NCBI RefSeq assembly: GCF_036588685.1
Contig: NC_086373.1
Coordinates: forward strand, 7,998,001 to 8,062,000
Reading direction: 5' to 3'
Length of the DNA stretch: 64,000 bases
Source of the DNA: Mytilus trossulus
Lineage: Eukaryota
Part shown: positions 1,282-56,208 of the stretch, one piece after another
How the letters are laid out: each line of letters begins with the position of its first letter
Numbering within the stretch: the first letter of the stretch is position 1
Program-made: the position numbers and the translations under genes
The notes under the pieces: generated by a model
What the model was told of the DNA's origin: nothing
The model's input: the letters and a program-made list of their open reading frames with translations, nothing else
Databases searched by the model: none

Positions 1282-4200
1282 CTGAAAAATTCAATGGAAA
1301 ACTACTTAATCAGTTTTTTCAACTTGATATATTTATCACTTGAATTTAAATTACAAGTATAACATCGACTTAAAATGTGTGGTGCCTCATTGGCAATTAT
1401 ACCACATCTTCTTTGTATATATACAGAAGAAAATGTATCATTTTATTTAGTGTTTTGCAGATTTCCGTTCTGCATACCATTGTTGTTTAAAGCCATGATT
1501 TTTTAATCTCTTTTTGACTAATGAGTATTGATTCTCACTGTTGTTTTGTCCTCCAATTTTATAAATCATATCAACAGCCACTTGACAATTGGTTTTGTGT
1601 AGATTAAACATATCAAAAGTTTTATGCAGTTGTACTTCTTTTGATCTTTTACTGAAATATAATTCGTAATGTGTTCTTTGTTCAATTCAAAAACATATAA
1701 ATTAATTTTAAATAGTGTTTAAATTTGCAGCTTTTTTTTATAGTACTTACACAATCGGTTTGTTCGTTTTTTACTTTGGTTAGCTGTGACACATGGTCTG
1801 ACAATGTACATTTATGTGTGGTGTACACCATAAGTGAATCTTGTCCGAAACTTGGAGTCATTCTTCCTGATTTTTCTTTCATCATAACGGCATGTGTATC
1901 TACTGCATACACACGTCCTTCTTCTTTTTCACATTCTGGAAAACAATAAAGTATTTATTGTATAATTTGAAATTGCCTGTGTTCAAATTGAGCTGAAAAA
2001 GGTTAACGGTGGGTGCTTTAAACAATACAATGAAAAAAATTGACTAGCAATATTAAGGAAATCCTATGGAAATTGATTGACAATGTTTTTTATTTAACTT
2101 AAGTTTGATATTTAGAAGTAATTTGTTTTAGATTTTCAATCATATAATTATAGCTATAGACATACCTTGAATATCTGAACTGTCGAGTACACCTGGTGTG
2201 GATTTAGTTCGTTGTATTTTTGATTTACATGAAGGTATCATGAAGCCATTTGGAAGGGATACTTGTTTTCCTAATCCTTTAAATATTTTTGTCGCTTTAT
2301 CCTTGTTAGCTGAATAATATTCTATCTCCACATCAATTTCCCTTCTCTTTAACATTGAAGCCACAGGGACAACTGATAAATAATAAGATACATTGTATAA
2401 GATATGTCACCGATAAATCAATACTTCAACAAATCATTGATAAAATGAAACGATAGAAAACAAATTCCTAATGCGAAATTTTGATAGTTTTATGATAATA
2501 TTAAGATATACGAAATACAAATGCGTTTATACAAATTTTGGCTATCCATTTCGATTTACCATTTTCTTAAACTCTTTCTAAAAAGAATTTTTTTTTAATT
2601 AAACTTACAGATAGGAACTTTTTTTTTGTCATTTATTCCTCAACTGACTAAATCAGATTTCAATTATCAAAATATTATGCATACCATTATATCTCAACGG
2701 TCCCATCCACCGAAACTTCTCACAGTCGTGCATCATATCACCAAACAGTCCAAATCCAAGTATCAGTGCCGAATATGACAAAAGTTTGCCTCCTTCGTGA
2801 ACACTACAAACGTTGGACTCGACGTTGCCACCAAGTAAGATATGGAGAACAGCAGTGCTTGCACATTTAGTCCCATGAAGATATTGAACAATCACGTTAC
2901 CAGAGCCTGCTGGGATGATACCAATGGGGAGTGATGCTGACACAATGTCAGTATTGTGACAATTCACATTCACATTGTTGTCTCGTTGAACCCGTGTAAT
3001 TAGTCCATTCATACACTCACAGTATAAACCATCACCACCTACTGTTACTATACTATAATTAAAAAATGACGTAAACATAAATTACAAATTCATTCGCCAC
3101 AAGCAACAATGAAAAGTTGTATCATACATATATTATTAATGCTTTGCTGAATAAATGTTGTGTACAAGTTTTAATAAACAAATTATTTTAATAACTATCT
3201 GGGTTTGGATTTTTTTTCTTAGGATTACGTTATTTTTATTTTCTTTTCAAGTGAATACAAGATTTTGTCTTATTTATCCAAAACTTAATTTGAATCGATA
3301 AAATATTTTGTTATCGAAACATTAGCTTTTATCAATGGGATGTTAAAAACGACTTCACCTACCCGTCAATATTCGATAGATTGTAGTTCTTCAGGATATC
3401 CGTAGGCTCTTTTTGTTTTCTAGTTACTGCAATAAAAAATAAATAAACACTGTAGTAATAATGGATTGTTTTTACCCGCACCCTTTGTGTGTTAAAGGTC
3501 GATTCGAAATTCAACCTGTACGATTCTTGTTTTTTTTTAATGAACATATCTTTTATGAACTATACTGCAAAATGCAGGATTGATTCGAATTTTTTGTAAG
3601 TCTTGATGTCTAGTTCTTGAGAAAATGCAACCAGAATTTTTGACCACTGTACCCCCACTTTCGGGATGGGAATATAATTCGAATAATTAAAAACAAAATC
3701 AATATTTGTAAGCAAAATATGATAATATAATTCACAGAACATTAAAACAAAGTTTATAAATAAAAAGTCTTACCAATGATATCAGCTTTCACGCCACAGA
3801 GTTGAAATAAAGGAGCTGCAACTTTTTTGTATTTTTGTATTCCTTTCTTCTTACCACTATTTGGGTTGATTATTACTAAAAGCCTCCTTGGTCGATCTTA
3901 AATCGACAAAAAAAATATAATAAGACATTTGAACAAGCGATTGTCTATTGTCATATCAATTTATAATCTGTATAATCCATGCGTACCAATATTGACATGC
4001 TATTTCTTTCGTCAGTACATAACAATTAAATATCAAAAACAGTTTAGTTACATCTATATTATAAACAACCTTTTACAAGTATAATGTACAACTAAATTGA
4101 ATACTATACAGCTAAAACATATTTAATTTTTGACTTCGATAAAACCGTTGTTTAAATAAATACCTTTTAATATGTGATCGATTTCACTTTGCAATATTTG

Positions 4201-38391: not shown

Positions 38392-38730
38392 TTATTTTGA
38401 TGCAGATTTACTCGTACATGAATTTTGGACGCGTTTCTTTAACTTCAAAATTGACTTCAGTTTACCGGAGGACGAGTTAAGTAAAATCACTTCATTTTTG
38501 CATGCTGATTGTATTTCACATTGGTCCATCCACTTAATCAGTTTTTGTCTTTTCCTGTTTTGGTGCAATCGCTTGTAATTTATAGTTGGTACTTCTGAAT
38601 CGTTAACGCTGATTACTTTAACATCTCTTGACGATTGAAGTTGGGCTGGGTCCTCGTTATCCTCGAATCTGTGTACTGATTCCCCAAGAATTGTTCGAAG
38701 AATTATGGATCCTAGAGGTAAACGGAACAT
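38392..38730 (-). CDS. Small intronless putative PP1-interacting protein, paralog 1 (112 aa; KLIKW RVxF-type motif, KSILK)
   Basis: Homologous to 48830-49171 and 55876-56208 (LGSIILRTILGE; IKWMDQCE; KSILK); TATAAAA at 38873-38879. Confidence 0.75.
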   Translation of the reverse strand: MFRLPLGSIILRTILGESVHRFEDNEDPAQLQSSRDVKVISVNDSEVPTINYKRLHQNRKRQKLIKWMDQCEIQSACKNEVILLNSSSGKLKSILKLKKRVQNSCTSKSASK

Positions 38731-38844
38731 TGCAAATAGGTCCTCAGAAAGTAAATGTTAGAAAGTATCATTGATCTAAAATATGATAAAAAGTGTGTAT
38801 TTTCTATAAACAAGTATGGGGTACCATACCTGTATGTGCAAAAA

Positions 38845-38945
38845 ATACATACAAATGATTGAACATGAATACTTTTATACCTATAAGTGGTCAACAACTT
38901 GTTTACTCTTTTTTTCGTTCACTTTTCCCCAACGCTTGCATGTGT
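38845..38945 (-). promoter_or_regulatory. Putative promoter of paralog 1: TATAAAA (38873-38879) and forkhead site GTAAACAA (38899-38906)
   Basis: Motifs seen directly upstream of the ATG. Confidence 0.55.
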
Positions 38946-39464
38946 TGTTTTGTTTTATTGGTGTGGTTTTCTTCCACTACTAAACTCAATACCCTTGATA
39001 AATACTATATTTATACTCGATGATTTACAAATTGAATAAAAAGTGATAATGGTAAACAGTACGACCTTTTTGGCCGCAGTTAAAGAATAACATAATTTAA
39101 ATGCATGAATATTCAAATAACAATTTTTAAAACGTCTCGCTGTTAGAAAGGTACAGTCCAACTTTTTTTAATGTTTACACACAAGTTTAGTATGATATTT
39201 ATAGAATAATTTTCTAAATATACCTTAAAGAATTCCATGTGGTATGTCTCGTTTGTTTGATAATAAGTTTATTTAAGGATTGACTTCGATTTTCTTTCAC
39301 AGATGACCTTGGATATATTCTTATTGTCGTATAAACAGCCCCGTATTCTTTCCGCTATAGTGAGATCACCAAATACAACTTATTTCCCTTGTATCTATAG
39401 ACATGCGCACGACAAAGGGTGCCACTTCTAGTGAAACAGAATATGTGTACCCTTCTGGAGCACA

Positions 39465-42400
39465 TAAGACCTCCCTCGGTTTTTGGTAGGGTTTGTTTAA
39501 TTAGGTATTTACTTTTCTGTGAAGTGTTTGCAGGCTGTTGTTTGTCTTTATACCTTCATTGAATGAAAGAATTAGTTCATATCAGACATGAATGTATTGT
39601 TTCGGTAACTGCGAGTATTCTTCGTACTATATTCTTTTTTTTGTGTTTGTTTTTCGCTATTCTGGTATTATAGATCAACAATTTAATGAACCAGATGCAG
39701 TTTTCTGTAACTAATGTTCCTTCAGTGATCCATGAGTGCTATCCAGTTGAACATCCAAAACCTAACACATACATTAAAGGCTTGATACAACCGAAAAGAC
39801 CCAAAACACTCTTCTGAGCGTATGTTCTTTGATATTCTACAAATAGCGATTTTAAGGGGTGTGGGTATACAAAAGTTAGTATAGAGCTGACTCATGTTCC
39901 AGTCGGCCTAACTGAGGAACCTTGTCAGCGGTGTTGTTTTAAAAAGCTTGTTTTGTCATTTAGTGAATTTTAAATTACTGGCCAACCTTTTTTTTAATTA
40001 ATAACTGGACGATTAAGAGCTTTACAAACTTTACAAAATTAGATTTTTGCTTTGAAGATTACGATTATAATTATAACTCACTTTTTCCACAAAGCTACGT
40101 AGTGGCACTATGAAGTTAAATGTTGATGTTGGGCGATATACATATTATACCAGGGGAAAACAGATTATGTTCTTGATGTAATATGAAAAGGTGTTGAAGA
40201 TAAGAACCATTTTACCTAGTGTGTCCTGTGTGGTGAATTGTACAGCTGCAGTTTTTACCAAACTACTACTGTTCGTGACCAAATATGACAAAGATTAGGT
40301 ATTTGTATCAAACAAAATCTAGATCTTTAGTTGGAAAATTGTGTAATTATTTCAATAGTGATGAGTACAATGGCAATATGTGTGAACGCCTTAAACGTAC
40401 ATTTGTGGGCTTTCTTCCTATTTGTTTACCCTTTCGTATGTATAGATATAAGTTATAGTTTTTCAAACTTATTTTGTATAAATTCATAACTCGGTTAGCG
40501 AACTCATCGTGTTAATGTTATAATACCAATGTATTAATTATCTATTTCTATTTTAAAACATTTCTTTTGAATTAAATATATATTCTCAAATGAATGTACT
40601 AAATAGATGTAAATGTTCATGACCATTGACACTTGCTCTATTGACATTAACCAGAAAAGGTAATGATTTGGGTATGTTTACTGAAAAATATTAAGAATGG
40701 ACTTATTGTATAGCGTCCCATTTCGCCAGTTTACTTTTATTATATCAAACAAAATAAATTTTGAAATGGAGAAGTCAAAAACAAAATCATCTTGTTTTGC
40801 TTTTTATATTTTAACAGAAATCTTGTTATCTTGGAGATATGGTATGATTACCAACAAGACAACTATCCACCAAAGTTCAAATGAAGTGGATGTAAGACCT
40901 CCCTCGGTTTTTGGTAGGGTTTGTTTAATTAGGTATTTACTTTTCTGTGAAGTGTTTGCAGGCTGTTGTTTGTCTTTATACCTTCATTGAATGAAAGAAT
41001 TAGTTCATATCAGACATGAATGTATTGTTTCGGTAACTGCGAGTATTCTTCGTACTATATTCTTTTTTTTGTGTTTGTTTTTCGCTATTCTGGTATTATA
41101 GATCAACAATTTAATGAACCAGATGCAGTTTTCTGTAACTAATGTTCCTTCAGTGATCCATGAGTGCTATCCAGTTGAACATCCAAAACCTAACACATAC
41201 ATTAAAGGCTTGATACAACCGAAAAGACCCAAAACACTCTTCTGAGCGTATGTTCTTTGATATTCTACAAATAGCGATTTTAAGGGGTGTGGGTATACAA
41301 AAGTTAGTATAGAGCTGACTCATGTTCCAGTCGGCCTAACTGAGGAACCTTGTCAGCGGTGTTGTTTTAAAAAGCTTGTTTTGTCATTTAGTGAATTTTA
41401 AATTACTGGCCAACCTTTTTTTTAATTAATAACTGGACGATTAAGAGCTTTACAAACTTTACAAAATTAGATTTTTGCTTTGAAGATTACGATTATAATT
41501 ATAACTCACTTTTTCCACAAAGCTACGTAGTGGCACTATGAAGTTAAATGTTGATGTTGGGCGATATACATATTATACCAGGGGAAAACAGATTATGTTC
41601 TTGATGTAATATGAAAAGGTGTTGAAGATAAGAACCATTTTACCTAGTGTGTCCTGTGTGGTGAATTGTACAGCTGCAGTTTTTACCAAACTACTACTGT
41701 CCGTGACCAAATATGACAAAGATTAGGTATTTGTATCAAACAAAATCTAGATCTTTAGTTGGAAAATTGTGTAATTATTTGAAATCGGCCTGGAAGATTA
41801 AATCACATCTAATTAATTGATTATTTGTCTATTGTAATATCTTATAATATTGTTCCCTGCTGTTTATTGTGTGTCACAATGTAAATATATGTGTGTTGCT
41901 ATAGCGTGTAACTACTGTTTTGCAAATAAAGAATTCATCCAAACTGTATTTATATTTGTATAACTTTCGTTGAGGACCACATCTTTGGGTTTTTGGTCTT
42001 TGGGTTGCTGTCCACTACGTTTATCCAACATTTACTTTTATTCATATAAACAATTATATATGCAAAAACTAGTATATATTTGTTTAGGGGCCAGATGAAG
42101 GACGCCTCCGGGTGCGGGAATTTCTCGCTACATTGAAGACCTGTTGGTGACCTTCTGCTGTTGTTTTTTTTATTTGGTCGGGTTGTTGTCTCTTTGACAC
42201 ATTCCCCATTTCCATTCCATCAATTTTATATATGCAAAAAACTTTGTACTGACCTGTTTTTTTAAATCTGAAGTACACGAACTGTTAGATCTGTACCTTT
42301 GAACACTCATAAATATTTGCAACGACAAGTCTTCACAATTATAAGCTATTTATACATTTAATAATTAAAACAAAATGAGACCAGCCAGCCAAAATATTTT

Positions 42401-42945
42401 TCAATAGTGATGAGTACAATGGCAATATGTGTGAACGCCTTAAACGTACATTTGTGGGCTTTCTTCCTATTTGTTTACCCTTTCGTATGTATAGATATAA
42501 GTTATAGTTTTTCAAACTTATTTTGTATAAATTCATAACTCGGTTAGCGAACTCATCGTGTTAATGTTATAATACCAATGTATTAATTATCTATTTCTAT
42601 TTTAAAACATTTCTTTTGAATTAAATATATATTCTCAAATGAATGTACTAAATAGATGTAAATGTTCATGACCATTGACACTTGCTCTATTGACATTAAC
42701 CAGAAAAGGTAATGATTTGGGTATGTTTACTGAAAAATATTAAGAATGGACTTATTGTATAGCGTCCCATTTCGCCAGTTTACTTTTATTATATCAAACA
42801 AAATAAATTTTGAAATGGAGAAGTCAAAAACAAAATCATCTTGTTTTGCTTTTTATATTTTAACAGAAATCTTGTTATCTTGGAGATATGGTATGATTAC
42901 CAACAAGACAACTATCCACCAAAGTTCAAATGAAGTGGATGTAAG
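39465..42945. repeat. Near-identical tandem duplication: 39465-40896 and 40893-42945 (1428-bp period; second copy has 621 extra bp at 41781-42401)
   Basis: Sequences match almost base for base; TAAG microhomology at the junction. Confidence 0.95.
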
Positions 42946-44281
42946 CAATAGATTCCACTTCGTAGTATTTCCCCCAGCCAGTGTTAATATGTTCCTGACT
43001 TCTGAATTAGTTCAAACCACCTATCATGTTCGTCTGTTTAATCTGTCTACAAAAAGACTTCTAATGGAACTATTTTCCGTTATGTAAAATTAAGAATGGA
43101 AATGGAGAATGTGGCAAAGAGACAACAACCCGTTCATAGAACAGACAGCAGCCGGACCCTAAACAAATATATATATCGTATACTAGTTCAGTGATAATGA
43201 ATGTCATACTTAACTCCGAATTATACACAATAAACTAAAATTAATATTCATACAAATCAAACCAAATACAAGACTAACAAAGGCCAGAGGCTCCTGTCTG
43301 GTGTTGATTTTCTTTATTTCCTGCATGGGGCGTTGTTCTTCATCAAAGTTTTCAATTGTATTGTAATGTCTGTAGATTAACCAGACAAAACAGCATTCTG
43401 ACTGACTTTAATAAACAGTGTGGCGCTATAGAACCAGTCTAAACCTATTTGCTTCGGTATTGGTCAGAAGATTTTTCATTTGAATTCCATATATTATGGT
43501 ATAGCGTTTTATTATATAACCCCAGATATCTGATTTTTGACCTTGGATTAGGAATGTTGAGTGAGTAAATACAATTGAAGTGCTAACTCGCTAAGTATCA
43601 ATTACATCGTTTAAAAAGACGGATTAAATTTTTTAAGACAAACACAAATTATAAGTCTCTTTTATGCAATATTCTGATTCGTTGGAATAAATGGTGTATT
43701 GATAAAACTATTTACGTCGAAAACATTATGCTTACATAAAACGTTAAGCAACATTGTTATCGTTAGAGCACTTTACAAGATAATTTTTTATATCAAATTT
43801 CACCAGGACTCTGACAGCTTCATAAACTTGTCCGAATTGGAAGACAGTCACTTAGCCTTCAAATGTTACAAACGTTTGAAACAAATATGTGGTTTAGAGT
43901 ATTAAACAAACACGGCCATTGTAGTCTGACCTTGGCTTAAGAATATTGAATAAGGTAATATATAGAGAAAAGCTAATTACAATTTTGATTGATCACACTA
44001 TAACAAGGTTGAATATACAGGTCTGTATTAAAACTCTGCATAACAATCTAAACGACTAAAACTTAATATTGAAAAAATAGGAATAAAAAATCCAGACCCA
44101 TATGATAACTTCTGTGAGTTAAACGGGGTTCCTACTGTAAGTGATCGTCGTGTTTATTGTTATTTTCATGCATTCGTCTACAAATCCTCCTTATACAGTA
44201 TTCAGTATACTTATTAAATTGGGAAATGCTTGCCCCTCTAGAGCACTGTAGTTCGTCCCTAGTTAAAAGTGGAGTTCATGA

Positions 44282-44390
44282 CACTCGCACCCACAAAGTG
44301 GAAAGGGATTAACATAAGTTGCAAAACTTGTTTCCCAATCCACTATAAATAAATATGTTTAAACTATAAACTATAAACTATAACTATAAA
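44282..44390 (+). mobile_element. 5'-truncated retroposon (SINE/LINE tail) with (AAACTAT)n tail and 11-bp TSD GGAGTTCATGA
   Basis: TSD at 44271-44281 and 44391-44401; AATAAA before the tandem tail. Confidence 0.8.
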
Positions 44391-47300
44391 GGAGTTCATG
44401 AAGAATTTTTCTGTTTTTCTTATTTTCCCTTAACCGTTTTCAGGGTAGACTTAAGCTCTTATTTAATAGTAATGCCAAAATTCCAAATTGAGGCGTTTAT
44501 GGTAGTGTTTACAGTTTTACATTTGAACTTATTTTCATCACAAAAGTTTAAACAGAATTATGAATGGAATTATTTTCATTGAACCTACACATACATGTAG
44601 CACCCGGTATAAAACGCTCCTTACAAGAAGCAAGTAATAAAATAAATAAAAATATAAAAAACGCGAGTGCTCGCCATTAATTTTAAATGTATGTAAACCT
44701 ATATTTATATCTTGGATAAATATAGTATATTCAAAGTTACTGTAAAAACAACATATTAAGAATTTAATTGAAAACGTTTATTGATGTGAATAAAAGCTTA
44801 AAACATCAAAACGACTGAGCACTTTAAATATCAGGTACATTGAGTGTAAATTTTATTCAACAAATGTCATAAAAAGGAAATATTGATGATTAAACTCGAA
44901 CTCATCAGATATACGAGCCAACCCTTAAACTTTGTATATCTAGAATATTTAAAACGACTGTACTTGGGTGCTATGAAAAACCAAACACATGTAAAAATTC
45001 CTAGCAGTTTTAGGCATAGACACTTGCACAATATCCTTCCTCGTCGAGTCTGTTTACTCTCTTCTCTTCGCTAGATCTAATTTTTCATCAAAAAAAAAAT
45101 TACACCTTTTTTCTTTTTGTTTTGTTAACACATCGTTGTTAATATATTGGTTTCTATGCGACTGTAATAAAAGTGGGATATTTAGCTAGCTATTAAACCA
45201 GGTTTAATCAACCATTGTGTACATACAAAATGCCTGTACGTGACCATGTCAGGAATATGACAGTTGTTATCCATTTGTTTGGTGTATTTGATCTTTTGTA
45301 TTTTGCCCTTTTCTGTATAAAAAAGTTCACTATTTGTTGTTTTTAACTTTTTTCTTATTTTCAAAACCCATTTTGTCAAATGAAGATGCGAAAGATACTA
45401 AACGAATTCAGCAGTTGAAATACTGAGCAACACGAACCCCACAAAAAACCAGGAGTGATAATAGCAGCCTGAGTCCATCTTTGGGAAACGTAGCGGGCAA
45501 TCTAAACAAATATACTCATATTTCTATTCTCAGAGCCAACTTGACCTAAACTTCACAGAATAAACTCCATGTATCATCTGAGAACTTAATTTCTGTATAT
45601 CACTATGAATCTAGAAAGATGTTCTTTTGAGAAAGAAAAAAAACCAAATGGTATTGAAATTTGTTATCCTCAACATTAATTAGTAGTCATTGACATTATT
45701 ACAATGTAAATCTAATTGTTTAATTTTCGAAGGGATGCATGAAAACGCCACTGAACCTGACTTGAGTTGAGAGGTGATACAAAGCATAAAGACAGAAGAT
45801 TGGTTGCGAAATAAAGGTGCGTTTTCAAATGGTGAGTTTGATTATCCTTTTGGTATATTTCGCCTCTTACTTTCAAAAACGGGTTTAAAAAAAAATTAAA
45901 AAATTGTGCCATGAATAAAACATCCATGCAATTTCGAGTATCTAAGAATAATGTAGATACCAGCCTCTCATTTCAATTCTTTTATCAACCTTTACAGTTC
46001 AACTTTTGCCCATGAGTCTTCAAATTATTCAAGATTTACACCGTCCATATATTAATAGTTTATACAGCATGGGGTTTCAGTATATATAAAAGTGTAATAA
46101 TGGAACCAGCTGTCAAGTGTCGTAGTTTATAAAGTACTGGTCTAAATAAATAACGTAAACATTAGTACAGACAAGAATTTGATGAAAATCGAAAGGGATA
46201 AATTGTCATAACAAATTAATATTTAGACAAAAGTTAAATTGTTCTTCCTGGTCATTTAAATATCTGATAGGAATTCTAAGTCTTAGTTTCTTTCGAATGA
46301 AAAAGCTTTAGATGAATTATCACGATTAACATCCATTCGTACTTTGTCCTCTAAAGGAGAAAACTTATCTGTCAGACATAATTAATATTTATCTTGATAA
46401 ACTAGTATTACATACTTAAGCTAAAGAGTTAAATCTATAGCCGACTTGAACTACATCTGATATTACAGTTAATTTGAACCTCAGCTTTTCGACTTCCTTC
46501 TTGGTGGCAAACAATATACTGTCTGATGTACATGTGTGAAGGTTTAGACACTGATCTTTGAATCAACGTACAAAGCTTCTTGTTATGTCATACATTCAGA
46601 CGCATTTTCAGTTCCAAAATCTATGTTGGGATGAATATCCTTGTAAGAAAAAGAAAAAAATGAACTTCGAGGAAATTCTGAAACGGAAAGTCCGTAATCA
46701 AAAAGCAATATCCAAAGCTCAAATAAATCAAACGAATGGATAACAACTGTCATATTCCTGACTTGGTACAGACATTTCCTTATTTATAAAATGGTGGTTA
46801 AAACCTGCTTTTAAAGCTAACTTAATCTCTCACTTGTATGACAATCGCAGAAAATGAATGCTTTGCAACACAAAATACAGAAAACAATTAGTTAAAAAGT
46901 TATAATAAATTTTCCAAAGAATATTTAATGTTCGGGTCCTGCTTTCACATACATGTATCTTAAACTAATACTAATCAATTGTATTTGAACCAGAATGACA
47001 AGAAAGTTTGTTCTTCAAAACTTCATAAACAAACGATGACAAAAAAATACAAATTTAGCTTCAAAACGAGATCTGATTACAATTTATGTCATTTGTATTG
47101 TTATCTTTTAAAACAGAATTAATAACAATTAGGTGTCAGACCCCCTACAAAGAACTGTTAAAACATGAATGTGATACTTACTAGTATATGTTTAAAACTG
47201 TATTGTGTGTCAAGACCAGCAAGTTAACGCCATCTATAAAGCAGTATCTATGCCGTTCAAAATAAAAGATATCGAACGACAATTAAAATACGAAATCGGA

Positions 47301-47432
47301 AAAGAACAGACAAAACCATTGCATAAAGAAAAGGGCAAAACCGTGATGGCAGATTCGATATGATACATTTCTTGAAAAATAATCAAAATAGACATCAGAA
47401 TTTCCTGTGTGTAGGGATGATAGTCAATAAGA

Positions 47433-47593
47433 ATATATATTTAACATTAACATATATATTTAACATTAACATATATATTTAACATTAACATATATTTAAC
47501 ATTAACATTAACATATATTTAACATTAACATATATATTTAACATTAACATATATATTTAACATTAACATATATTTAACATTAACATGAACATA
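47433..47593. repeat. AT-rich ~19-bp minisatellite (atatatatttaacattaac)n
   Basis: Seen directly. Confidence 0.95.
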
Positions 47594-47599
47594 TGCACT

Positions 47600-47972
47600 C
47601 TGACTTTTAGTGTGCGTATTTTAATGCGTTTACTTTTCTAAATTGGCTAGAGGTATAGGGGAGGTTTGATATCTCATAAACATGTTTACCCCCCCCCCCC
47701 CCCCCCCGCATTTTTTCGCCTGTCCCAAGTCAGGAGTCTCTGGCCTTTGTTAGTCTTGTATTATTTTTTATTTTAGTTTCTTGTGTACAATTTGAAGTTT
47801 AGTATGGCGTTCATTGTCACTGAACTAGTATATATATATTTGTTTAGGGGTCAGCTGACGCCTCCGGGTGCGGGAATTCCTCTCTGCATTGAAGACCTGT
47901 TGGTGACCTTCTGTTGTTCTATGGCCGGGTTGTTGTCTCTTTGACAGATTCCCCATTTCCATTCTCAATTTT
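47600..47972 (-). mobile_element. Interspersed repeat family B copy (others ~42070-42225 -, 43095-43300 +, 60030-60305 -, 62488-62580 +)
   Basis: Recurring gaatggaaatggggaatgtgtcaaagagacaacaacccg…caggtcttcaatg. Confidence 0.8.
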
Positions 47973-48509
47973 ATATACCGTTTCATTCAGAATAAATGTT
48001 CTTTGTTAATTTCTCTACTGTATCACTATAGCTAGTCGGTCAAGTTATTAAGCCCGAACCCAGCACGTTGCAGTTGCGTTTGACTCCAATCTAAATGGAA
48101 TAGAATTGCAAGTTGTTTTTTCCCTTTTTTCCGGTTTTCTTTACCGATAAAAAACTGGCCAATATGGTCAATAATTCTGACAGTGGTGTTAAACACCAAA
48201 TATCTGTCAATCATTCATTTAGATTGAGAAATACAATAAAAGAACTGTGTAAATGCTTTCAGTATTGTGGCATTTTTCAAGTGCGCATAATGATCTTATA
48301 TCATAAATTGGTACACAATAACCTTTATCATTTCTTATATAAAATCCCCAGAAATTAAGTTTGAATTATGAGACACTTTGTTTAAATTGATACAATTAGA
48401 CATAGGAGTTACGAATTACAGTATTATATCTTATACAATCCTATATTTCATCAGAAATACACACAGTTTGAAATGTAATATTTGTTACTTCCATAATCGT
48501 ATAATATTT

Positions 48510-48760
48510 CATCAGAAATAGACACTCCTGAATTATTAATGCTCAATTTGATTTCAAATAGACACAAAATCAATAACTTTAGTGCCATTTCAATAAGAGG
48601 ACGTTCCGCAAAGTACTTATAAATGACTTTCATAAAGTGATTGACGGAAGAATTATGGATTTGGATTATTTCCAGCAGGTGGGATTTAAAAAAGTAAACA
48701 AATAATATCATGTGTGTCAGTACATTTAAGGACGTGGGATTTAAAATATTCTCAGTTTCA
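48510..48760 (+). promoter_or_regulatory. Conserved upstream module of paralog 2 (shared with 55550-55790)
   Basis: cagaaatagacactcc, ttccagcag, GTAAACAA, acatttaaggac in the same order as upstream of paralog 3. Confidence 0.65.
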
Positions 48761-48829
48761 TAAATTTAACAGAAGAGATAAGACCTCGAATTTAAACATA
48801 AAAAACATACCAGCAAAACTTTATTGAAG

Positions 48830-49171
48830 ATGACGACATTATCCTTTGCATCAGATATATTCAAGACAGTTCTCGGAGAAATAGACAGTAAATATATTGA
48901 TACTGATAGTATGACGTGGAAAGCTTCCGGAGACAGTGACGACAGCTCAGACGAAAACTTCAGTCAAAGAAGACATTCTTTACCAGAGACAAATAAAAAT
49001 CATCCTTATAAAAGCGAAGGCAAAAGGCGGAGAAGCGTTCAATGGATCGATGAGTGTGAAAAGTTACCTTTAGCATCAGAAAGCAGACGACCATCTTTTG
49101 GGAAATCAAACGCAGAACCTAAACCGATTTTGAAGCATAAAGCAAACTGTTTTATTATTGTATCAGAATGA
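48830..49171 (+). CDS. Small intronless putative PP1-interacting protein, paralog 2 (113 aa; RSVQW, KPILK)
   Basis: True ATG at 48830 (the ORF track starts at TTG 48824); clear homology to paralog 3 (VQWIDEC, PLASE, PILK, ANC.I.VSE). Confidence 0.85.
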   Translation: MTTLSFASDIFKTVLGEIDSKYIDTDSMTWKASGDSDDSSDENFSQRRHSLPETNKNHPYKSEGKRRRSVQWIDECEKLPLASESRRPSFGKSNAEPKPILKHKANCFIIVSE

Positions 49172-50074
49172 ATCAAAACTGGACATCAATTCTTATATGA
49201 GGAACAACCAAAGATATAGACACTCGCATGAAGTAGTGTTAAGTGAAATATCATGGTCTGAGGAAGACATAGACACTCGCATCAGGATTTTTAATGGCTA
49301 TTACAGTGTTATGGTCCCACAAAACAGACACTCTCCAGGTTGTTTGTAGTCGCAATAGTAGCATCATGATCCGACGACGAAGACAAATAAATCTGAACAC
49401 TGTCAATATAATGGTGCTTTGTAACATTAACGTTGATTATTAGGTAAAAACCTAGTTAATATGAATAGAACGTTTCATTCATAGTGAACTGTTCGTGTGC
49501 TGACTGCTTTAAATCAGTTTAATACTTGCCACTGGACTTTAAAGAACTAAATACTTATCAATCAAATATTAGTTAATGCTGAGGAAGTTTGATGTAGTTA
49601 TACAAATTATCATTGATCTCAGGTATTACCAAGTGTGCAATTTTTATTATATTTTTTGTTCCTGTTATGTAGCAAAATCTTATGTATTTATTCATATGAA
49701 TAATAAAATGTATTTTTTATATTTATATTTAAGCTGCTTTTTATTCTTCATAACTAGTTATTTGTCTCCCACAATTATTAATTGACATGATTTCCCAAAA
49801 CCCAGAGGAAACAGTATGTACACTTCATTTTAATGGTCATATACATATATGTGTATATAAATTGAGGAATGCGATTTCCCAGTTCTAACCAGTAGATCCC
49901 TCACAAATAAACCCGATGCTTCACTTTGGCGAGGGTGTCAATCGGCCAGCTTGAAGAATAACCATATTTATACACCCAGGCAGCCCTTTGGTTTCATATT
50001 GAATGCATAGTCCCTTGTTCGTTGTTGGAGGATATGTTAAACGTAAGATAGTCATTTTTGTCGTTTGGTTGCTG

Positions 50075-50335
50075 CCTCTTTGACGAATAGACCACAATTC
50101 AATTTATTCATTTTGTTGTCGTTTGTTTGCTGTCACTTTGATGATTACACTACATCTCATTTTATTCATTTTGTTGTCGTTTGTTTGCCGTCTCTTTGCA
50201 TGATGATCACACTACATCTCATTTTATTCATTTTGTTGTCGTTTGTTTGCCGTCTCTTTGATGATCACACTACATCTCAATTTATTCATTTTGTTGTCGT
50301 TTGGTTGCTGTCTCTTTGATGATTACACGACATTT
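50075..50335. repeat. ~60-bp tandem repeat, ~4.5 copies (ttttgttgtcgtttgtttgccgtctctttgatgatcacactacatctcattttattca)
   Basis: Seen directly. Confidence 0.92.
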
Positions 50336-51550
50336 CCTTTTATTTATAAGTGTACTAGGGAAAATGACAGATATTTTTAAGTTATTGCAAGGGTTGATAT
50401 GATAAAAATAGATTAGGGTAAAACTTCAGGAGACCGCCTCCCATCAGTTCAGATAATATTAATAAAATATCCAGAGGTCAACATACGGACTCGTCAATGT
50501 GAAATTTTCTTAGGATCGACACCAAATAATTTTTGAATCGGTTTTTGAAACTGCCTTGGTGTCAAGTAAATTTGTTACTTTTTAAAATACATGTGTTTTT
50601 AAGCTTATAGTATCGTTGGCATATTGATTCTTAAACCACTACCCCGAACATATTTATAATAAATAAATAAAAACTATAACTATCTTTACAAGGAGGTTGC
50701 TTGTTGAATTTCATTTAATTAGAGATAATAACAAAAGTTTTCCTTATTCGTATGGGTTTACAAATGATGATTTGTATTCATTTACTGTAGAAAGATGCCA
50801 TTGTCCTGAATTTAAATAAATAATAAAGTATATTTTTCATGTCGGAAAACAATTTCTATACAGTCTACCAGCCATTTTTCAAGGTTATCTAAAATTCCAA
50901 AATGACTAGAAATGCAAAGTGTAAAAATTTGACATTGTCCCACTAACAATTCCAACTTAATAGAAATTCGGCATTGTCCTTTTAAAAAGACAAACAGCTT
51001 AGTAAGGATAATCAAACAAATCTGTTATTCTGTAATGTAAGCAAACATGGCTATTTTAGACGATATTAGCCTTAAAAGTGGATAAAACAAGAGTTGATTA
51101 AAATTATAATACATCACATAGTTAAACATAAAAAGTCTGAGAGCATTAATAGACTGCCATATGTAGAGTTAACGCATCAACTACAAACCAGACATAGACC
51201 GTTGGTGTTCCCGTTTGAATGGTTTTACACTAGTAATTTTGGGGCCCTTTATAGCTTGTTGTTCGGTGTGAGCCAAGGCTCCGTGTTGAAGGCCGTACTT
51301 TAACCTATAATGGTTTACCTATTAAATTGTTAATTGGATGGAGAGTTGTCTCATTGGCACTCACACCACATCTTCCTATATCTATATCAACGAAAAGAAG
51401 AAGAAAAACCAAACCACAAAATATTACAGCTCAGTACAATTTACTAGCCCACCAAACAATCAACATTGTTTTTTAAGAAGAAGATGGTTCTTAGAATTTA
51501 GCGACATGCGTTTTTTTTTAACTTAGGTCTAGACATTAGATGTGACGCTT

Positions 51551-51946
51551 TTCACTCATTAGTTACCCAACGGTGGAGTCTTTCACTCATTAGATACCCA
51601 ACGGTGGAGTCTTTCACTTATTAGATACCCAACGGTGGAGTCTTTCACTCATTAGATACCCAACGGTGGAGTCTTTCACTCATTAGATACCCAACGGTGG
51701 AGTCTTTCACTCATTAGATACCCAACGGTGGAGTCTTGAAATGAATTAGATACCCAACGGTGGAGTCTTGAAATGAATTAGATACCCAACGGTGGAGTCT
51801 TTCACTCATTAGATACCCAACGGTGGAGTCTTGAAATGAATTACGACTCTTTTCACTCATTAGATACCCAACGGTGGAGTCTTGAAATGAATTATGACGC
51901 TTTTCATTCATTAGATACCCAACGGTGGAGTCTTGAAATGAATTAT
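51551..51946. repeat. 31/32-bp minisatellite (ttcactcattagatacccaacggtggagtct), 11 cores, grading into 51-bp units
   Basis: Seen directly. Confidence 0.95.
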
Positions 51947-53154
51947 GAAGCATGTGTTGTTGTGTTGATGCATGTGTTTGGATGTTTACCCCATTTACAA
52001 CGTTAAGTTGATTTTTTTTTGTCAATAACATTAATTTGGTAAAAGCAAAATGTAATAATTTGAAGCCTGAAAAATGTACAAAAAGGACACTTCTCTGTTC
52101 TGTCACATATTGGAAAAATTTTTAGAAATTGATATTAATATTTCAATCTTTTATCTTAAATTTATGTTAGCAACAACTTGAAAGTCGAATTTTCATTTGA
52201 AAAATATTCATAAATGAATATAGGATAACGATCATGTAGTATATTTTCGCTGTGATATTCTAGTTTCTTGTGGATACACGCAAAGCAGAAGCATACCGAC
52301 TAGTAATAATTTAACCTGGCATGCCATATAATATTAACGTTAGGGTCGAACGTTTCGGACGTATTGGTGAAAATAATTTTATTGTTTCATTTTTTTACTC
52401 TATTTTCATATCTAGTATATATTTCATTTCATATTTGATTATTGACCCCGACTTTGTCGTTAATCTTGACATTTACGCGTTTTACCGGCGGATTAATTGT
52501 CATAATCTTGGACAAGGGTGGATTTTATAACTCTTTATATTTAATAACGTTTCCTCTGACAGCTAAGACACTAATTTACAATTATTTTGATCCCCTGCAA
52601 TGGACACTGATTACTCTATGGATCTTTTGTTATTTCTGTTTGTCATCTGTTAATCTTCTTAACCTTTCATTGTATGTGCTTATGTATATTCTTATTATTA
52701 TGTTACATTTGTTTAATAATTATTCCTATCTATATTATGTAATATATGTGGTTAATTTTATACCACAGCATTTTTATGCTTTCACAATAAAGATTCATTC
52801 ATTCATATACTATTCCCGATAGCCCTACACCTTACTATCAATTTAATGTATAAATATAAATTTGTTGCGGCAAGCAAGATTGAAAAATTAAACCTGATAA
52901 ATAGAGTAAGGTATTTTTTTCTCTCTCAGAAAGTTAAAAAAGTTATGAACATCTAATTTTATAAAAATAAAACTAAAGATTGACCAAAACAGGATGAAAA
53001 ATAACATAAATCCGTGTTGTTTTTAAATTCAAAATCACTGGTCTTTTCAATGGCATTTTTCATAGTTTTTACATCATTTGTTACTATACTATATATAAAA
53101 ATATTAATTTTCGCGAACCATTTAGGTCACGGAAATTCCAAAATATGGCATCAG

Positions 53155-53539
53155 TTAGGAGAGTTGTGCAAATGATGTGAATACACAGAACCCCAATCCA
53201 AATTATCTTTAGCTTAAAGTATTCATCATTTTCTATTTTATATGTACTAACAACATTCCATTTTTCTATAATTTCGATTAAAATATTCCAAAATCTGACT
53301 CTAATGCCCCAAATAAAAATTGTCTGATTGGTTGAAGTACTGTGGCGTCGATGATTAGCATAATAAGCCTCGATTTAAAGCACACGCTTCACAGGAATGA
53401 GGAGAGTTTTACAAATTGTGTGAATACACAGATCCTCCATCCTATTTATATTTTCGGCTGGAAATGTTGCAGTGTTCATCATTTCTGTTTTGATTCTGCT
53501 CACAACATTCCATTTTTTCTATAATTCCGATTTAAATAT
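53155..53539. repeat. Degenerate direct duplication (53155-53288 / 53398-53539)
   Basis: tgtgaatacacaga…caacattccattttt…ctataatt.cgatt.aaatat shared. Confidence 0.8.
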
Positions 53540-54689
53540 GTGGAACCCGCAATAAAAATAGATGGCCTCAATCACGTGACCTCAATGATTTAAAAGCAAC
53601 GCAAAAAATTACGTTAATATAAGCATATGTTGTACTTTGACCCTGAGTTCTACGATGTTACATAAACCGAATCACACATAAAGATCTTTGCGGTCAAATG
53701 TAATTCTTGGTGAAGTATACGGGTAACTTCGTTTACGAAATTTTATACACACTTTATCATTAACATATTACCAGGCTTTTGCATATTCACGTTTTTTTAT
53801 GCTGAACTGTAGTCGAATTCAATTCTATACATTTTTTTTACGTAAAGCAATAGGAGTAAGAATATTTTTTTCGCGCCAATTTAACCAGCATCATCACCAT
53901 CAACAAAATTATGTACCGTTATTTTTGTGCAATTTCAGTTATATAGTTTATCAATTAGAGAAATTTTGGTAAGTATTACTTACTAATGTTAAGGTTCTAC
54001 TGATGTGCTTCTTTAGACCTTTTTGACGGTCCGTGTTATCCCCATTTATCTCAATACTATCTCCGATGACAGAAATGTCAACCCGACGAAAGTGAAAATC
54101 GCATCTGTTTGATGAAATAATTTCTTCTTCAACGGTTCATGCATTATTTTTGTATTATTTGATAACAAATCAAAATAAAAAAATGAACGAAAAACAAATA
54201 TGTAACACATAAACAAACCAACCACTGAATTACAGGCTCCTGACTTGAGACAGGCACATACATAAATAATGTGGCGGGGTTAATCATGTTAGCGGGATCC
54301 CAACCCTCCCCCTCACCTGGGACAGTGGTATAACAGTACAACATAAGAACGAACTATAAAAATTAGTTGAAAAAGGCTTAACTCATCAGATAGACAAAAA
54401 ATAACACACAAAAAATAACACCATATAGGAAAAACATAGAACTCCTTTTGTCATAAGACACTGTCAAACATCCAAACATACTATCCACACTCATCTGTGT
54501 CCACACTTGTAATATAACACAATCTCTATCCCGTTAGAAAAAACAGATAACATTTTTATTTGTAATATTCACTTTCATCCATGTTAAATGAAATTATAAA
54601 TGTAACGATTTGATAAAAGGAAATAAAAAATTGGAAGTATTTAAAAACGAATCAAACCGTTTATTGACAAAGAGTTCTAATTAAAATGT

Positions 54690-54812
54690 GGTCTTCATCT
54701 TTGGCCTTTTTAAAACTTTTTAATTGAGAGGCACCGATGAGCCTTTGGTAGATCGGATGCACGCGCATCTAGAGTAGACATTTATAAAACTGGAAACTAT
54801 GATGAGTTTATT
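54690..54812 (+). mobile_element. Heavily decayed retrozyme/hammerhead fragment
   Basis: tttggccttttt…gagaggcaccgatgagcctttggtaga…acgcgcatc resembles 23240-23345. Confidence 0.6.
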
Positions 54813-55294
54813 CAAAAAAATTTACTAACTAATGTGTAAGCTAGAAAATCTAAAAAGAAACATTTGGTCACAATATTAATGCCTACGGTACTTTCTACTA
54901 CTTGTTTTCGAATTGCAGATCAACATCCCGATAAAATTGAAAAATAGCGGACTCAGAAGGCTCCATTTTTTTTATAAAAATATCTTTGTTTCACACAATT
55001 TTTATAGCATTGATGGCATTTTCGTCGAACGAAGACCCGCTCTTTGTGATATATGGCGCTGTTGTTGCTTGTTCGATTTATGATTGCCCTTGATAGCACG
55101 TCTTTTAAACCCTTGTTTACATATATAATATATTGCAATTACCCGGATCTAACTTTATAAAATGCTTCATCAATTTGTTACTAATAATAAATATATGTGA
55201 AATATAGTTATATTGTTTATTATTTTATATGTCACAAACTTAATGTTTAAAGTTTATATGGCAATAAATATTTGAATTTGAATTTGAATAAACT

Positions 55295-55394
55295 TGTGCA
55301 CAGAAATCTATTTACGTGCATCTTCTATGCAGTGACGACATAGACATGTGCACAAAATTAATTCTACGTGTAGCTTTATATGCAGTGACGACAT
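55295..55394 (+). repeat. Two ~52-bp direct repeats, each with TACGTG and TGACG, upstream of paralog 3
   Basis: Seen directly. Confidence 0.8.
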
Positions 55395-55549
55395 TCAATT
55401 GTTGAACAAATTCAATATGGTAATACAGTTCTTTACAAAACTCCTATTTGAATTTTCTAAATATTTGATTCGAGTTTCCGGTTTTTCATTTAACTATCGC
55501 CTATTATATATGTAACCTATCACGTAATTACAAATAGTAGCAATTCTTT

Positions 55550-55790
55550 GTTCAGAAATAGACACTCCCTTTCAAATTAGTAGATGATTCTCGGTCTATG
55601 ATCATTCAATTGTATAAAAGGCGTTTCGTAAGTACACCTGAGAGGGTTTATGGGCAACTTGACTGACGGATTACTCTGGCTTGGTTCCAGCAGACGGGTA
55701 TTTAAACGTAGATAAACAATCGAGTTGCATGTTGGGAAGACATTTAAGGACATTCCCTTATAACGATATCTTGTATTGCATTTTATACAT
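55550..55790 (+). promoter_or_regulatory. Conserved upstream module of paralog 3
   Basis: cagaaatagacactcc (55553-55568), ttccagcag, ATAAACAA, acatttaaggac. Confidence 0.65.
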
Positions 55791-55875
55791 TGACTTTCAC
55801 TTGAAAATATAGTTGTCTCTACCAACAATTATTTAGTCGCACTTTATCTAAACGAACTATTAACCACAGTTGCAT

Positions 55876-56208
55876 ATGGATCATTTGACATTGGGATCGG
55901 ATATATGGAAAACATCACTAGGTAAAATTGGAGAAAATAGTTCTTTGAAAAATGATTCCGAAGACAGTGATGATGGCTTACATATTAATTCATTTCAAAA
56001 GGAGAAAACACGTTTACATAGAAACAAGAAATATTCATATAAACTGGACAATGAAAAGAGAGTAAGAACTCGTGTCCAATGGATAGACGAATGTGGAGAT
56101 GTACCTCTGGCTTCTGAAAACAGAAATTCTTCAAAAAAGGACTTACGACTAAAACCTAGGCCTATCTTAAAATATCGAGCCAACTGTCTCATCGTTGTAT
56201 CGGAATAG
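55876..56208 (+). CDS. Small intronless putative PP1-interacting protein, paralog 3 (110 aa; RVQW, RPILK)
   Basis: True ATG at 55876; homology to paralogs 1 and 2; AATAAA at ~56490. Confidence 0.85.
   Translation: MDHLTLGSDIWKTSLGKIGENSSLKNDSEDSDDGLHINSFQKEKTRLHRNKKYSYKLDNEKRVRTRVQWIDECGDVPLASENRNSSKKDLRLKPRPILKYRANCLIVVSE

What the first reader, a model, noticed from the sequence alone, without database searches (positions are those of the whole stretch)
38392..56208. Cluster of three paralogous intronless microproteins with a fixed RVxW + SILK-like PP1-docking architecture
Seen: three ~110-aa single-exon ORFs (38392-38730 -, 48830-49171 +, 55876-56208 +) share an N-terminal block L.(F/L)(A/G)S.I(F/W/L)(K/R)T.LG(E/K), a variable acidic/Ser linker, a basic run leading into KLIKWMDQC / RSVQWIDEC / RVQWIDEC, and 25-26 residues later KSILK / KPILK / RPILK. 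Paralogs 2 and 3 also share PLASE and a C-terminal ANC(F/L)I(I/V)VSE. Conservation confined to motifs, with open frames despite strong divergence, suggests purifying selection. Established: [KR]-x(0,1)-[VI]-{P}-[FW] (RVxF) and [GS]IL[KR] (SILK) are PP1 docking motifs, and RVQWIDECG..PL echoes the extended RVxFAD..G..L of PPP1R3 glycogen-targeting subunits. In inhibitor-2 and Knl1 the SILK lies N-terminal of the RVxF; here it is C-terminal at a fixed distance. Inference: an undescribed, possibly lineage-restricted family of small disordered PP1 regulators expanded in tandem. I recognise no known family.
Basis: partly seen in the sequence, partly recalled or inferred. Interest (0 to 1): 0.88.

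Follow-up and report, generated by a model that had tools for sequence, protein, structure and literature searches.

The report
Bivalve small PP1-docking protein family
The three small open reading frames are real members of an unnamed, so far bivalve-only family of mostly disordered ~110-aa proteins whose only invariant residues form two docking motifs for protein phosphatase 1, making them probable new regulators of that enzyme, although this motif layout is already known from other proteins.

Summary
All three ORFs are open at the stated coordinates. They belong to a cluster of six open paralogs spread over 135 kb of a Mytilus chromosome. About 50 small homologs were found, and every one that carries a name is a bivalve 'hypothetical protein' (Mytilus, Potamilus, Sinanodonta, Mactra, Dreissena). 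There is no Pfam or PDB sequence match.

Across 45 divergent members the only invariant columns are W and D of RVxW-x-D and I-L-K of K[SP]ILK. Synonymous sites between paralogs are saturated while pN is 0.30-0.55, and DNA similarity is confined to the motif-coding segments.

A structure-prediction test against an invertebrate PP1 catalytic subunit scored 0.91, best control 0.00. It placed V70/W72 in the RVxF groove, L-P-L-A beside Phe293, and PILK in the SILK pocket. This is a model, not proof.

RVxF followed by SILK is solved in RRP1B:PP1 and occurs in yeast Rif1 at about the same spacing. The spacing is fixed only within mytilids (25-27 residues) and ranges from 25 to 50 across the family. 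ORF1 is a divergent member that may be decaying.

The roles of the conserved N-terminal helix and the C-terminal hydrophobic end are unknown.

Verdict: a new member family of a known kind of PP1-interacting protein.

The parts
48830..49171 (+). ORF2, 113-aa family member. This is the protein used in the complex model. It is 98% identical to a Mytilus galloprovincialis 'hypothetical predicted protein'.
   Evidence: (profile E 7e-50)
55876..56208 (+). ORF3, 110-aa family member and the closest paralog of ORF2 in the window.
   Evidence: E 1e-45; orthologous to P0058, support 100/99
38392..38730 (-). ORF1, 112-aa divergent member. It has KLIKW and KSILK but lacks the PLA and NCxIIVSE blocks, and it sits on a very long tree branch.
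   Evidence: (E 8e-33)
48839..48895 (+). ORF2 residues 4-22: the conserved N-terminal block (GS-D-I-F-[KR]-x-V-[LM]-x-E-I-D-x-K-Y), predicted to be an amphipathic helix. Its role is unknown.
   Evidence: G7 and S8 nearly invariant; helix 9-26, block pLDDT about 85
49031..49045 (+). ORF2 residues 68-72, RSVQW: the RVxF-type PP1 docking motif, followed by the invariant D74.
   Evidence: W72 and D74 invariant, V70 nearly invariant; contacts PP1 168-169, 242-243, 261, 288-293
49064..49078 (+). ORF2 residues 79-83, LPLAS: a PhiPhi-like segment 6 residues after the W.
   Evidence: (L81/A82 touch PP1 292-293)
49121..49135 (+). ORF2 residues 98-102, KPILK: a SILK-type motif.
   Evidence: I100, L101, K102 invariant; K98 nearly invariant; contacts PP1 53-59, 86, 114, 116-117, 119, 166-167
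49145..49168 (+). ORF2 residues 106-113, NCFIIVSE: the conserved hydrophobic C-terminal end (C107 nearly invariant). Its role is unknown, and it is not in the confident interface.
56071..56082 (+). ORF3 residues 66-69, RVQW.
56158..56172 (+). ORF3 residues 95-99, RPILK.
38530..38544 (-). ORF1 residues 63-67, KLIKW.
38443..38457 (-). ORF1 residues 92-96, KSILK.

Best explanation
These are independent small protein-coding genes of a bivalve family of intrinsically disordered PP1-interacting proteins. Each protein anchors to the face of the PP1 catalytic subunit opposite the active site. It uses three short linear motifs in the order basic run + RVxW (RVxF groove), a [LVK]-P-[LI]-A segment (PhiPhi site next to Phe293), and K[SP]ILK at least 25 residues later (SILK pocket). 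This is the same path that the RRP1B PP1-binding domain takes. Shown here: open frames, paralogy and orthology, protein-level constraint, motif invariance, and a control-passed in-silico docking. Inferred: the proteins bind PP1 in vivo, and the conserved N-terminal amphipathic helix, the acidic/Ser-rich linker and the hydrophobic C-terminal end supply the regulatory output. I think the most likely output is targeting PP1 to a partner or substrate; the next most likely is inhibition in the manner of inhibitor-2 or inhibitor-3. The family has expanded in tandem separately in mytilids and unionids.
For: The ORFs are open. Six open paralogs lie in one 135-kb cluster and nowhere else in the 1.3-Gb assembly. 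There are 28 and 49 homologs in two large protein searches. All are small, and the named ones are bivalve hypothetical proteins; consecutive Potamilus locus tags show a tandem cluster there too. In 45 sequences with 27% mean column identity, only W72, D74, I100, L101 and K102 are invariant, and G7, S8, V70, K98 and C107 are nearly so. pS is 0.65-0.91 against pN 0.30-0.55, and dN/dS is 0.11-0.32 where it can be computed. Paralog DNA similarity is restricted to motif-coding segments. The monomer model is disordered apart from helix 9-26. In the complex test with PP1c, ipSAE was 0.91/0.91/0.92 against a best control of 0.00, partner pLDDT was 47-49, and the runs agreed in at least 50% of contacts. 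That mark was reached by 51 of 78 solved complexes and 2 of 108 mismatched pairs. The contacts fall on PP1 168-169, 242-243, 261 and 288-293 (RVxF groove) and 53-59, 86, 116-119 and 166-167 (SILK pocket and acidic patch). Asn86 and the acidic patch Glu54/Glu56/Asp166/Glu167/Asp242 are named as that region in PMC10066265. The RVxF-groove residue list is from my own knowledge (Egloff et al. 1997). The same motif order is solved for RRP1B.
Against: There is no experimental binding data. The docking score may reflect the model's memory of solved RVxF/SILK complexes, and the test is not calibrated for disordered partners. Most members have P rather than G/S at SILK position 1, which falls outside the published consensus. 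The RVxF regex alone is common in proteomes. The best-conserved blocks besides the motifs (the N-terminal helix and the C-terminal NCxIIVSE) were not placed on PP1, so the regulatory mechanism is unexplained. Transcription and translation were not verified. The PP1c used came from an unidentified invertebrate metatranscriptome contig, not from Mytilus itself.
Confidence: 0.65

Rival explanations
1. The proteins are real, but the conserved motifs serve another partner (for example another PPP-family phosphatase or an unrelated receptor), and the PP1 resemblance is coincidental. In this case the N-terminal helix and the C-terminal strand would be the true functional core.
For: The N-terminal block and the C-terminal NC[ILV]I[IV]VS[ED] end are strongly conserved yet lie outside the confident PP1 interface. 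SILK position 1 is usually P. RVxF-like strings are frequent by chance.
Against: The only invariant columns coincide exactly with the anchor residues of two PP1 motifs. A basic run precedes the first motif and an acidic residue follows it, as in proven PP1 binders. The spacing is never shorter than 25 residues, comparable to yeast Rif1 at 27 and RRP1B at 37. The docking score was 0.91 against 0.00 for the controls.
Confidence: 0.15
2. They dock to PP1 mainly as substrates or as competitive decoys rather than as regulators. PP1 would dephosphorylate the Ser/Asp-rich linker (CK2-like sites), or the proteins would simply buffer free PP1c.
For: An acidic Ser-rich linker (DSDDSSDE type) sits between the helix and the RVxW in most members. 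Many RVxF-bearing proteins are PP1 substrates (general statement in PMC3937515).
Against: The linker sequence is poorly conserved. The conserved helix and C-terminal end suggest an added function. No data distinguish this reading from the main one.
Confidence: 0.12
3. The ORFs are exons of a larger gene, or they are transposon or pseudogene ORFs and not independent genes.
For: RNA evidence could not be obtained. Some paralogs have an AG directly before the ATG, so an upstream non-coding exon is possible. ORF1's relatives differ after residue ~90 or are truncated.
Against: The start Met and the stop sit at the family's conserved ends in all six paralogs. Stops in homologs from four bivalve orders likewise fall within 0-2 residues of the conserved C-terminal block. 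There are only six copies, all in one cluster. The flanks share no similarity. pN is lower than pS. NCBI annotates the same 113-aa protein in M. galloprovincialis.
Confidence: 0.05

Closest known systems
RRP1B PP1-binding domain (human, residues 682-727; crystal structure with PP1, PMC9813921)
   Same: [quoted passage not shown] Its SILK variant is also non-canonical (GVLK there, PILK here).
   Different: There is no sequence homology. RRP1B is a large nucleolar protein with a Nop52 domain, its gap is 37 residues and includes AF and beta/gamma-specificity contacts, and its RVxF ends in F. Here the whole protein is ~110 aa, the gap is at least 25 residues, the motif ends in W, and a conserved N-terminal helix and C-terminal hydrophobic end are added.
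Yeast Rif1 N-terminal PP1 module (KSVAF at 114, SILR at 146; PMC3937515)
   Same: The order is RVxF then SILK, with 27 residues between F and S, almost the same as the 25-26 here. It acts as a PP1-targeting module.
   Different: Rif1 is a ~1900-aa HEAT-repeat protein with no homology to this family. Its motifs are flanked by DDK/CDK sites.
Inhibitor-2 (PPP1R2, Pfam IPP-2)
   Same: It is a small, disordered PP1 binder whose K-G-I-L-K and K-S-Q-K-W-D-E motifs resemble K-P-I-L-K and R-V-Q-W-x-D-E here. It also carries one functional helix.
   Different: The order is reversed (SILK, then RVxF, then the inhibitory helix). No IPP-2 HMM match was found, and no IDoHA helix is evident.
Inhibitor-3 (PPP1R11, Ypi1)
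   Same: It is a small disordered PP1 inhibitor with a W-ending RVxF (KVEW), a weak SILK-type motif, basic patches, and functionally important Cys (PMC10066265).
   Different: Its SILK is N-terminal and a CCC motif binds the active-site metal. There is no PPI_Ypi1 HMM match and no CCC here; this family has only single conserved Cys residues (after W-x-D-E in pteriomorph members, and C107).
PPP1R3 glycogen-targeting subunits
   Same: The RVxF is followed by an acidic residue, and a hydrophobic residue lies a few positions later.
   Different: There is no CBM21 domain and no HMM match. The similarity does not go beyond the generic RVxF context.

Membership tests
RVxF-type PP1-interacting proteins (a functional class defined by motif, not by homology) | [RK]-x(0,1)-[VI]-{P}-[FW] motif in a disordered region | tested here: met
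   KLIKW, RSVQW and TRVQW in the window ORFs. V is nearly invariant and W invariant in 45 members. The region is predicted to be non-helical coil.
RVxF-type PP1-interacting proteins (a functional class defined by motif, not by homology) | The motif occupies the PP1 RVxF groove (Ile169, Leu243, Phe257, Arg261, Leu289, Cys291, Phe293) | tested here: met
   In silico only. The least-error contacts of V70/W72 are with PP1 168-169, 242-243, 261 and 288-293; score 0.91 against a best control of 0.00. The groove residue list is from my own knowledge (Egloff et al. 1997).
RVxF-type PP1-interacting proteins (a functional class defined by motif, not by homology) | Physical, motif-dependent binding to PP1c | not testable with these tools
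   This needs pull-down, ITC or SPR with V->A and W->A mutants.
SILK-motif PP1 binders | [GS]-I-L-[KR] (extended to G/S-I/V-L-K by the RRP1B structure) | tested here: inconclusive
   ORF1 (and ORF4 and ORF5 outside the window) have SILK. ORF2, ORF3 and most family members have PILK, which is outside the published consensus. I-L-K is invariant, and the model places residues 96-102 in the SILK pocket.
Inhibitor-2 (Pfam PF04979 IPP-2) | Match to the IPP-2 profile, with order SILK - RVxF - inhibitory helix | tested here: not met
   No IPP-2 hit at E<=1 for 20 members or at E<=10 for the three ORFs. The motif order is reversed.
Inhibitor-3 / Ypi1 (Pfam PF07491) | Match to the PPI_Ypi1 profile, and a CCC metal-binding motif after the RVxF | tested here: not met
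   No hit. There is no CCC in any member.
PPP1R3 glycogen-targeting subunits | CBM21 carbohydrate-binding domain after the RVxF | tested here: not met
   No Pfam hit. The proteins end about 40 residues after the motif.
Transposable-element ORF | Many dispersed copies, with shared flanks or terminal repeats | tested here: not met
   Six copies in one cluster. The flanks are unrelated.

The most novel reading that the evidence does not exclude
The conserved N-terminal amphipathic helix and the strictly C-terminal hydrophobic end [NT]-C-[ILV]-I-[IV]-V-S-[ED] form a regulatory module not seen in any known PP1 regulator (a new way to inhibit or retarget PP1). On this reading, the repeated tandem expansions in mussels reflect a bivalve-specific need: for example, control of PP1 in gametes or embryos, or buffering of PP1 in animals that accumulate phosphatase-inhibiting algal toxins such as okadaic acid.
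Probability: 0.12. Interest if true: 0.7.

Novelty: new member of a known kind. Interest (0 to 1): 0.45.

Why it matters
PP1 gains its specificity from more than 200 unrelated docking proteins, and most known ones come from vertebrates, yeast and flies. This would be an undescribed family from molluscs, whose PP1 regulators have been little studied. It is small enough to be missed or left as 'hypothetical', and it is expanded in tandem in at least two bivalve orders. It gives a compact natural example of the RVxF-PhiPhi-SILK docking path, with a minimal linker of about 25 residues, and two further conserved blocks of unknown function that can be tested directly. It is a useful annotation and a tractable biochemical lead, but it is not a new principle.

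Tried and rejected
- **Pfam.** Scans of the three ORFs and of 20 members gave only sub-threshold noise.
- **PDB sequences.** A profile search found only chance hits: eL28 at E 0.08 and phage Bet at E 0.16.
- **ESM Atlas.** Queries with ORF2 and P0093 returned nothing above 0.85. The nearest cluster with a Pfam family was PP1c_bdg at 0.75, which is within chance range and was not used as evidence.
- **Large bacterial hits.** Hits to bacterial TPR_12 proteins (P0026, P0027) and to an EGF/InlB-repeat giant (P0029) in the profile search are repeat-summed chance matches to one helix or one motif.
- **PP1c source.** Mytilus PP1c could not be used directly. A scan of viral contigs for PP1c found nothing. 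A full-length invertebrate PP1c came from a metatranscriptome contig.
- **Scan notes and literature.** A word search of the scan's earlier notes found nothing. Literature searches for RVxF with bivalve or with microprotein found nothing relevant. A phrase search for a SILK 'C-terminal to the RVxF' found no paper.
- **Rfam.** A gathering-threshold scan of the window found no matches.
Full report
**Observation**

The three ORFs translate cleanly at the stated coordinates: 38392-38730 (-) gives 112 aa, 48830-49171 (+) gives 113 aa, and 55876-56208 (+) gives 110 aa.
- the N-terminal block;
- a variable acidic/Ser linker;
- a basic run leading into KLIKW-M-D-Q-C, RSVQW-I-D-E-C or TRVQW-I-D-E-C;
- K-S-I-L-K, K-P-I-L-K or R-P-I-L-K, starting 25-26 residues after the W;
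- for ORF2 and ORF3, PLASE and a C-terminal ANC[FL]I[IV]VSE.

ORF2 and ORF3 are unambiguous paralogs (tblastn E 3e-22, 43% identity). ORF1 is marginal in pairwise comparison (E 5e-4 and 0.35) but clearly belongs to the family by profile (E 8e-33).

The window is AT-rich (about 32% GC). The per-codon stop probability is 0.076, so the chance that 110 codons stay open is about 1.7e-4. Only 9 of 1945 ATG-ORFs in the window reach 100 aa, and three of those nine are these ORFs.

**Extent of the family**

A profile search of the window's own 1.3-Gb assembly finds six members and no more. All six are open, and all lie within 135 kb of one chromosome. They are the three ORFs in the window plus G000:C1:8067646-8067978, 8110714-8111046 and 8170580-8170867, all on the + strand.

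ORF2 is 98% identical to a Mytilus galloprovincialis 'hypothetical predicted protein' of the same length, so the window is from Mytilus.
- An exhaustive HMMER search of 1.84 billion representative proteins, using a four-sequence profile, gave 28 hits.
- A word-indexed search of 5.8 billion proteins, using a 20-sequence profile, gave 49 hits.

Apart from three large repeat proteins that are chance matches, the hits are proteins of 56-263 aa (most of them 94-181 aa) carrying the same motifs. The few that have names are hypothetical proteins of Potamilus streckersoni, Sinanodonta woodiana, Mactra antiquata and Dreissena polymorpha. The Potamilus members have locus tags CHS0354_011007, 011008, 011009, 011012 and 011017 on one contig, so the gene is tandemly clustered there too.

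A maximum-likelihood tree puts the unionid members in one clade (100/99) and the heterodont-type members in others, with the mytilid paralogs forming the basal groups. The tree therefore suggests that the expansions are at least partly lineage-specific. It also shows orthologous pairs, such as ORF3 with P0058 (100/99) and Potamilus P0061 with Sinanodonta P0062 (99/98).

Whether the family exists outside bivalves is open.

**Is it a known family?**

No match was found.
- Pfam gives only sub-threshold noise, both for the three ORFs and for 20 members.
- A profile search of all PDB chain sequences gives only chance hits.
- The ESM Atlas gives nothing above 0.85.
- Literature searches for RVxF with bivalve or with microprotein returned nothing relevant.

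**Evidence that the proteins are under selection**

In a 45-sequence alignment with 27% mean column identity, the only invariant columns are W72, D74, I100, L101 and K102 (ORF2 numbering). G7, S8, V70, K98 and C107 are at least 90% conserved.

Between the six Mytilus paralogs:
- synonymous sites are saturated (pS 0.65-0.91), while pN is 0.30-0.55;
- where dS can be computed, dN/dS is 0.11-0.32;
- third codon positions differ more than first and second positions in every pair.

Nucleotide similarity between paralog loci of 3.3 kb is restricted to the segments that encode the N-terminal block, the RVxW region and the C-terminus. The flanks share only unrelated dispersed repeats. This pattern rules out recent segmental duplication, transposon ORFs and neutral decay.

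Upstream regions align poorly overall. ORF2 and ORF3 share short boxes within about 200 bp of the ATG, as do ORF4 and ORF5, and those boxes include TATA-like sequence. That fits separate promoters, but I did not pursue it further. Some paralogs have an AG directly before the ATG, so a non-coding 5' exon cannot be excluded.

**Structure and docking**

AlphaFold2 with the 45-sequence alignment predicts a disordered chain with one helix at residues 9-26. Mean pLDDT is 64.6, and the best block, at about 85, is residues 11-20.

For the interaction test I needed a PP1 catalytic subunit. Instead I took a complete 327-aa invertebrate PP1c from a metatranscriptome contig (L018:125-1105). It is identical to the Mytilus exon over 45 residues and has the standard PP1 numbering.

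Results of complex prediction for PP1c 1-300 with full-length ORF2:
- Scores (ipSAE) were 0.91, 0.91 and 0.92.
- The best of three controls scored 0.00.
- Partner pLDDT was 47-49.
- The runs agreed in at least 50% of contacts.
- The pass mark was reached by 51 of 78 solved complexes and 2 of 108 mismatched pairs. On eukaryotic pairs the figures were 71 of 105 and 2 of 126.

The confident interface comprises ORF2 residues 68-74, 76-77, 79, 81-86 and 96-102:
- V70 and W72 touch PP1 168-169, 242-243, 261 and 288-293. This is the classical RVxF groove (groove residue list from my own knowledge, Egloff et al. 1997).
- L81 and A82 touch PP1 292-293, the PhiPhi area.
- I100 touches PP1 86, 116 and 117, with further contacts at 49, 53-59, 114, 119 and 166-167. 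PMC10066265 names Asn86 as a SILK-pocket residue and Glu54/Glu56/Asp166/Glu167/Asp242 as the acidic patch between the SILK and RVxF pockets.

The tool itself warns that a pass for a pair resembling solved complexes may come from memory, and that disordered partners were not part of its calibration. I therefore treat this result as showing that the sequence is compatible with the known docking mode, not as proof of binding. The N-terminal helix and the C-terminal eight residues were not placed with confidence.

**Comparison with what is known**

It has clear precedents.
- Budding-yeast Rif1 has KSVAF at 114 and SILR at 146, which leaves 27 residues between F and S (PMC3937515).
- Sreesankar et al. 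noted that both motif orders occur and that the swap is not unique to Rif1 (PMC3410773).

The gap in this family, by group:

| Group | Residues between W and SILK position 1 |
|---|---|
| Window ORFs | 25-26 |
| Mytilid-type members | 25-27 (nearly all 26) |
| Another group (P0021, P0023, P0036 and relatives; taxa unnamed) | 27-28 |
| Unionids | 30-31 |
| Heterodont-type members | 32-38 |
| Most distant members | 44-50 |

The linker therefore has a minimum length rather than a fixed one.

The individual motifs resemble those of inhibitor-2 (K-G-I-L-K and K-S-Q-K-W-D-E; sequence recalled from my own knowledge) in reversed order. The W-ending RVxF recalls inhibitor-3 (KVEW). Neither family's profile matches, however, and neither family's inhibitory element (the IDoHA helix, the CCC motif) is present. 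The PPP1R3 resemblance is limited to an acidic residue after the RVxF, and there is no CBM21 domain.

**Mechanism I commit to**

These are small disordered PP1-docking proteins that clamp onto the non-catalytic face of PP1c through basic-run/RVxW, PhiPhi-like and SILK-type motifs. A separate functional module is formed by the N-terminal amphipathic helix, possibly together with the acidic Ser-rich linker and the conserved hydrophobic C-terminal end.

By analogy with RRP1B, this docking mode leaves the catalytic cleft open. I therefore favour a targeting or specificity role over direct inhibition, but this step is inference. My overall confidence that the family binds PP1 through these motifs is about 0.65-0.7. 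My confidence that these are real protein-coding genes is about 0.9.

**ORF1**

ORF1 keeps KLIKW and KSILK but lacks the P-L-A segment and the C-terminal NCxIIVSE. It sits on a branch of length 3.42, against a median of 0.32. Its closest relatives elsewhere are P0017, which is 62% identical over the first 95 residues and then diverges without a SILK at the family position, and P0005, which stops soon after the RVxW-type motif. This copy is either decaying or evolving a different C-terminal half.

**Limits**

Many homologs come from Logan contigs of 1-4 kb seen in up to 92 assemblies. That would fit transcripts, but it does not prove them. The spliced Mytilus PP1c was deliberately not assembled.

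**Verdict**

Its docking architecture is already known, so it is a new member of a known kind and of moderate interest.

Noticed in passing
G000:C1:8067646-8067978, 8110714-8111046, 8170580-8170867 (L004, L005, L006; all + strand, beyond the window's right end): Three further open paralogs of the family extend the cluster to six genes over 135 kb. The sixth (L006) has lost the C-terminal NCxIIVSE and ends in V-Y-D-W-F, as do its relatives P0013 and P0060.
   Followed up: yes
Family members P0063-P0096 (heterodont-type, outside this genome): The longer members (135-180 aa) carry an N-terminal S-S-P-P-x-R-P extension and a Cys-rich insert, C-[KR]-R-C-x(6-8)-C-x-C, between the helix and the RVxW. 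The insert may bind zinc and is absent from all Mytilus copies.
   Followed up: no
window 2653-3078 (-): A 141-aa ORF matches the diacylglycerol kinase catalytic domain (DAGK_cat, E 7e-10). It is probably an exon of a lipid-kinase gene flanking the cluster.
   Followed up: partly
window 40697-40990 (+) and 42746-43087 (+): Two ORFs share an identical 66-residue N-terminus, so a repeat unit of about 2 kb is duplicated between ORF1 and ORF2. The one copy tested (42746-43087) has no Pfam match.
   Followed up: no
window 51714-52106 (-): This ORF is built from a tandemly repeated peptide unit (N-S-F-Q-D-S-T-V-G-Y-L-M-x-E). It is most likely a minisatellite and not a gene.
   Followed up: no
   Followed up: partly
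L002:2944-3212 versus the reverse complement of L003 at 1918-2279 (i.e. about 1.1 kb downstream of ORF3 and about 0.1-0.4 kb downstream of ORF1): A dispersed repeat of about 270-350 bp, 80-82% identical, lies near both genes. It is unrelated to the coding similarity.
   Followed up: no
ORF2 residues 6-28, versus bacterial proteins P0026 and P0027: The N-terminal block (S-D-I-F-K-T-V-L-G-E) closely resembles the recurring helix A-S-[DE]-I-F-[KR]-T-[AV]-L-G-E of bacterial TPR_12 repeat proteins. I judged this a chance similarity to a single amphipathic helix.
   Followed up: partly
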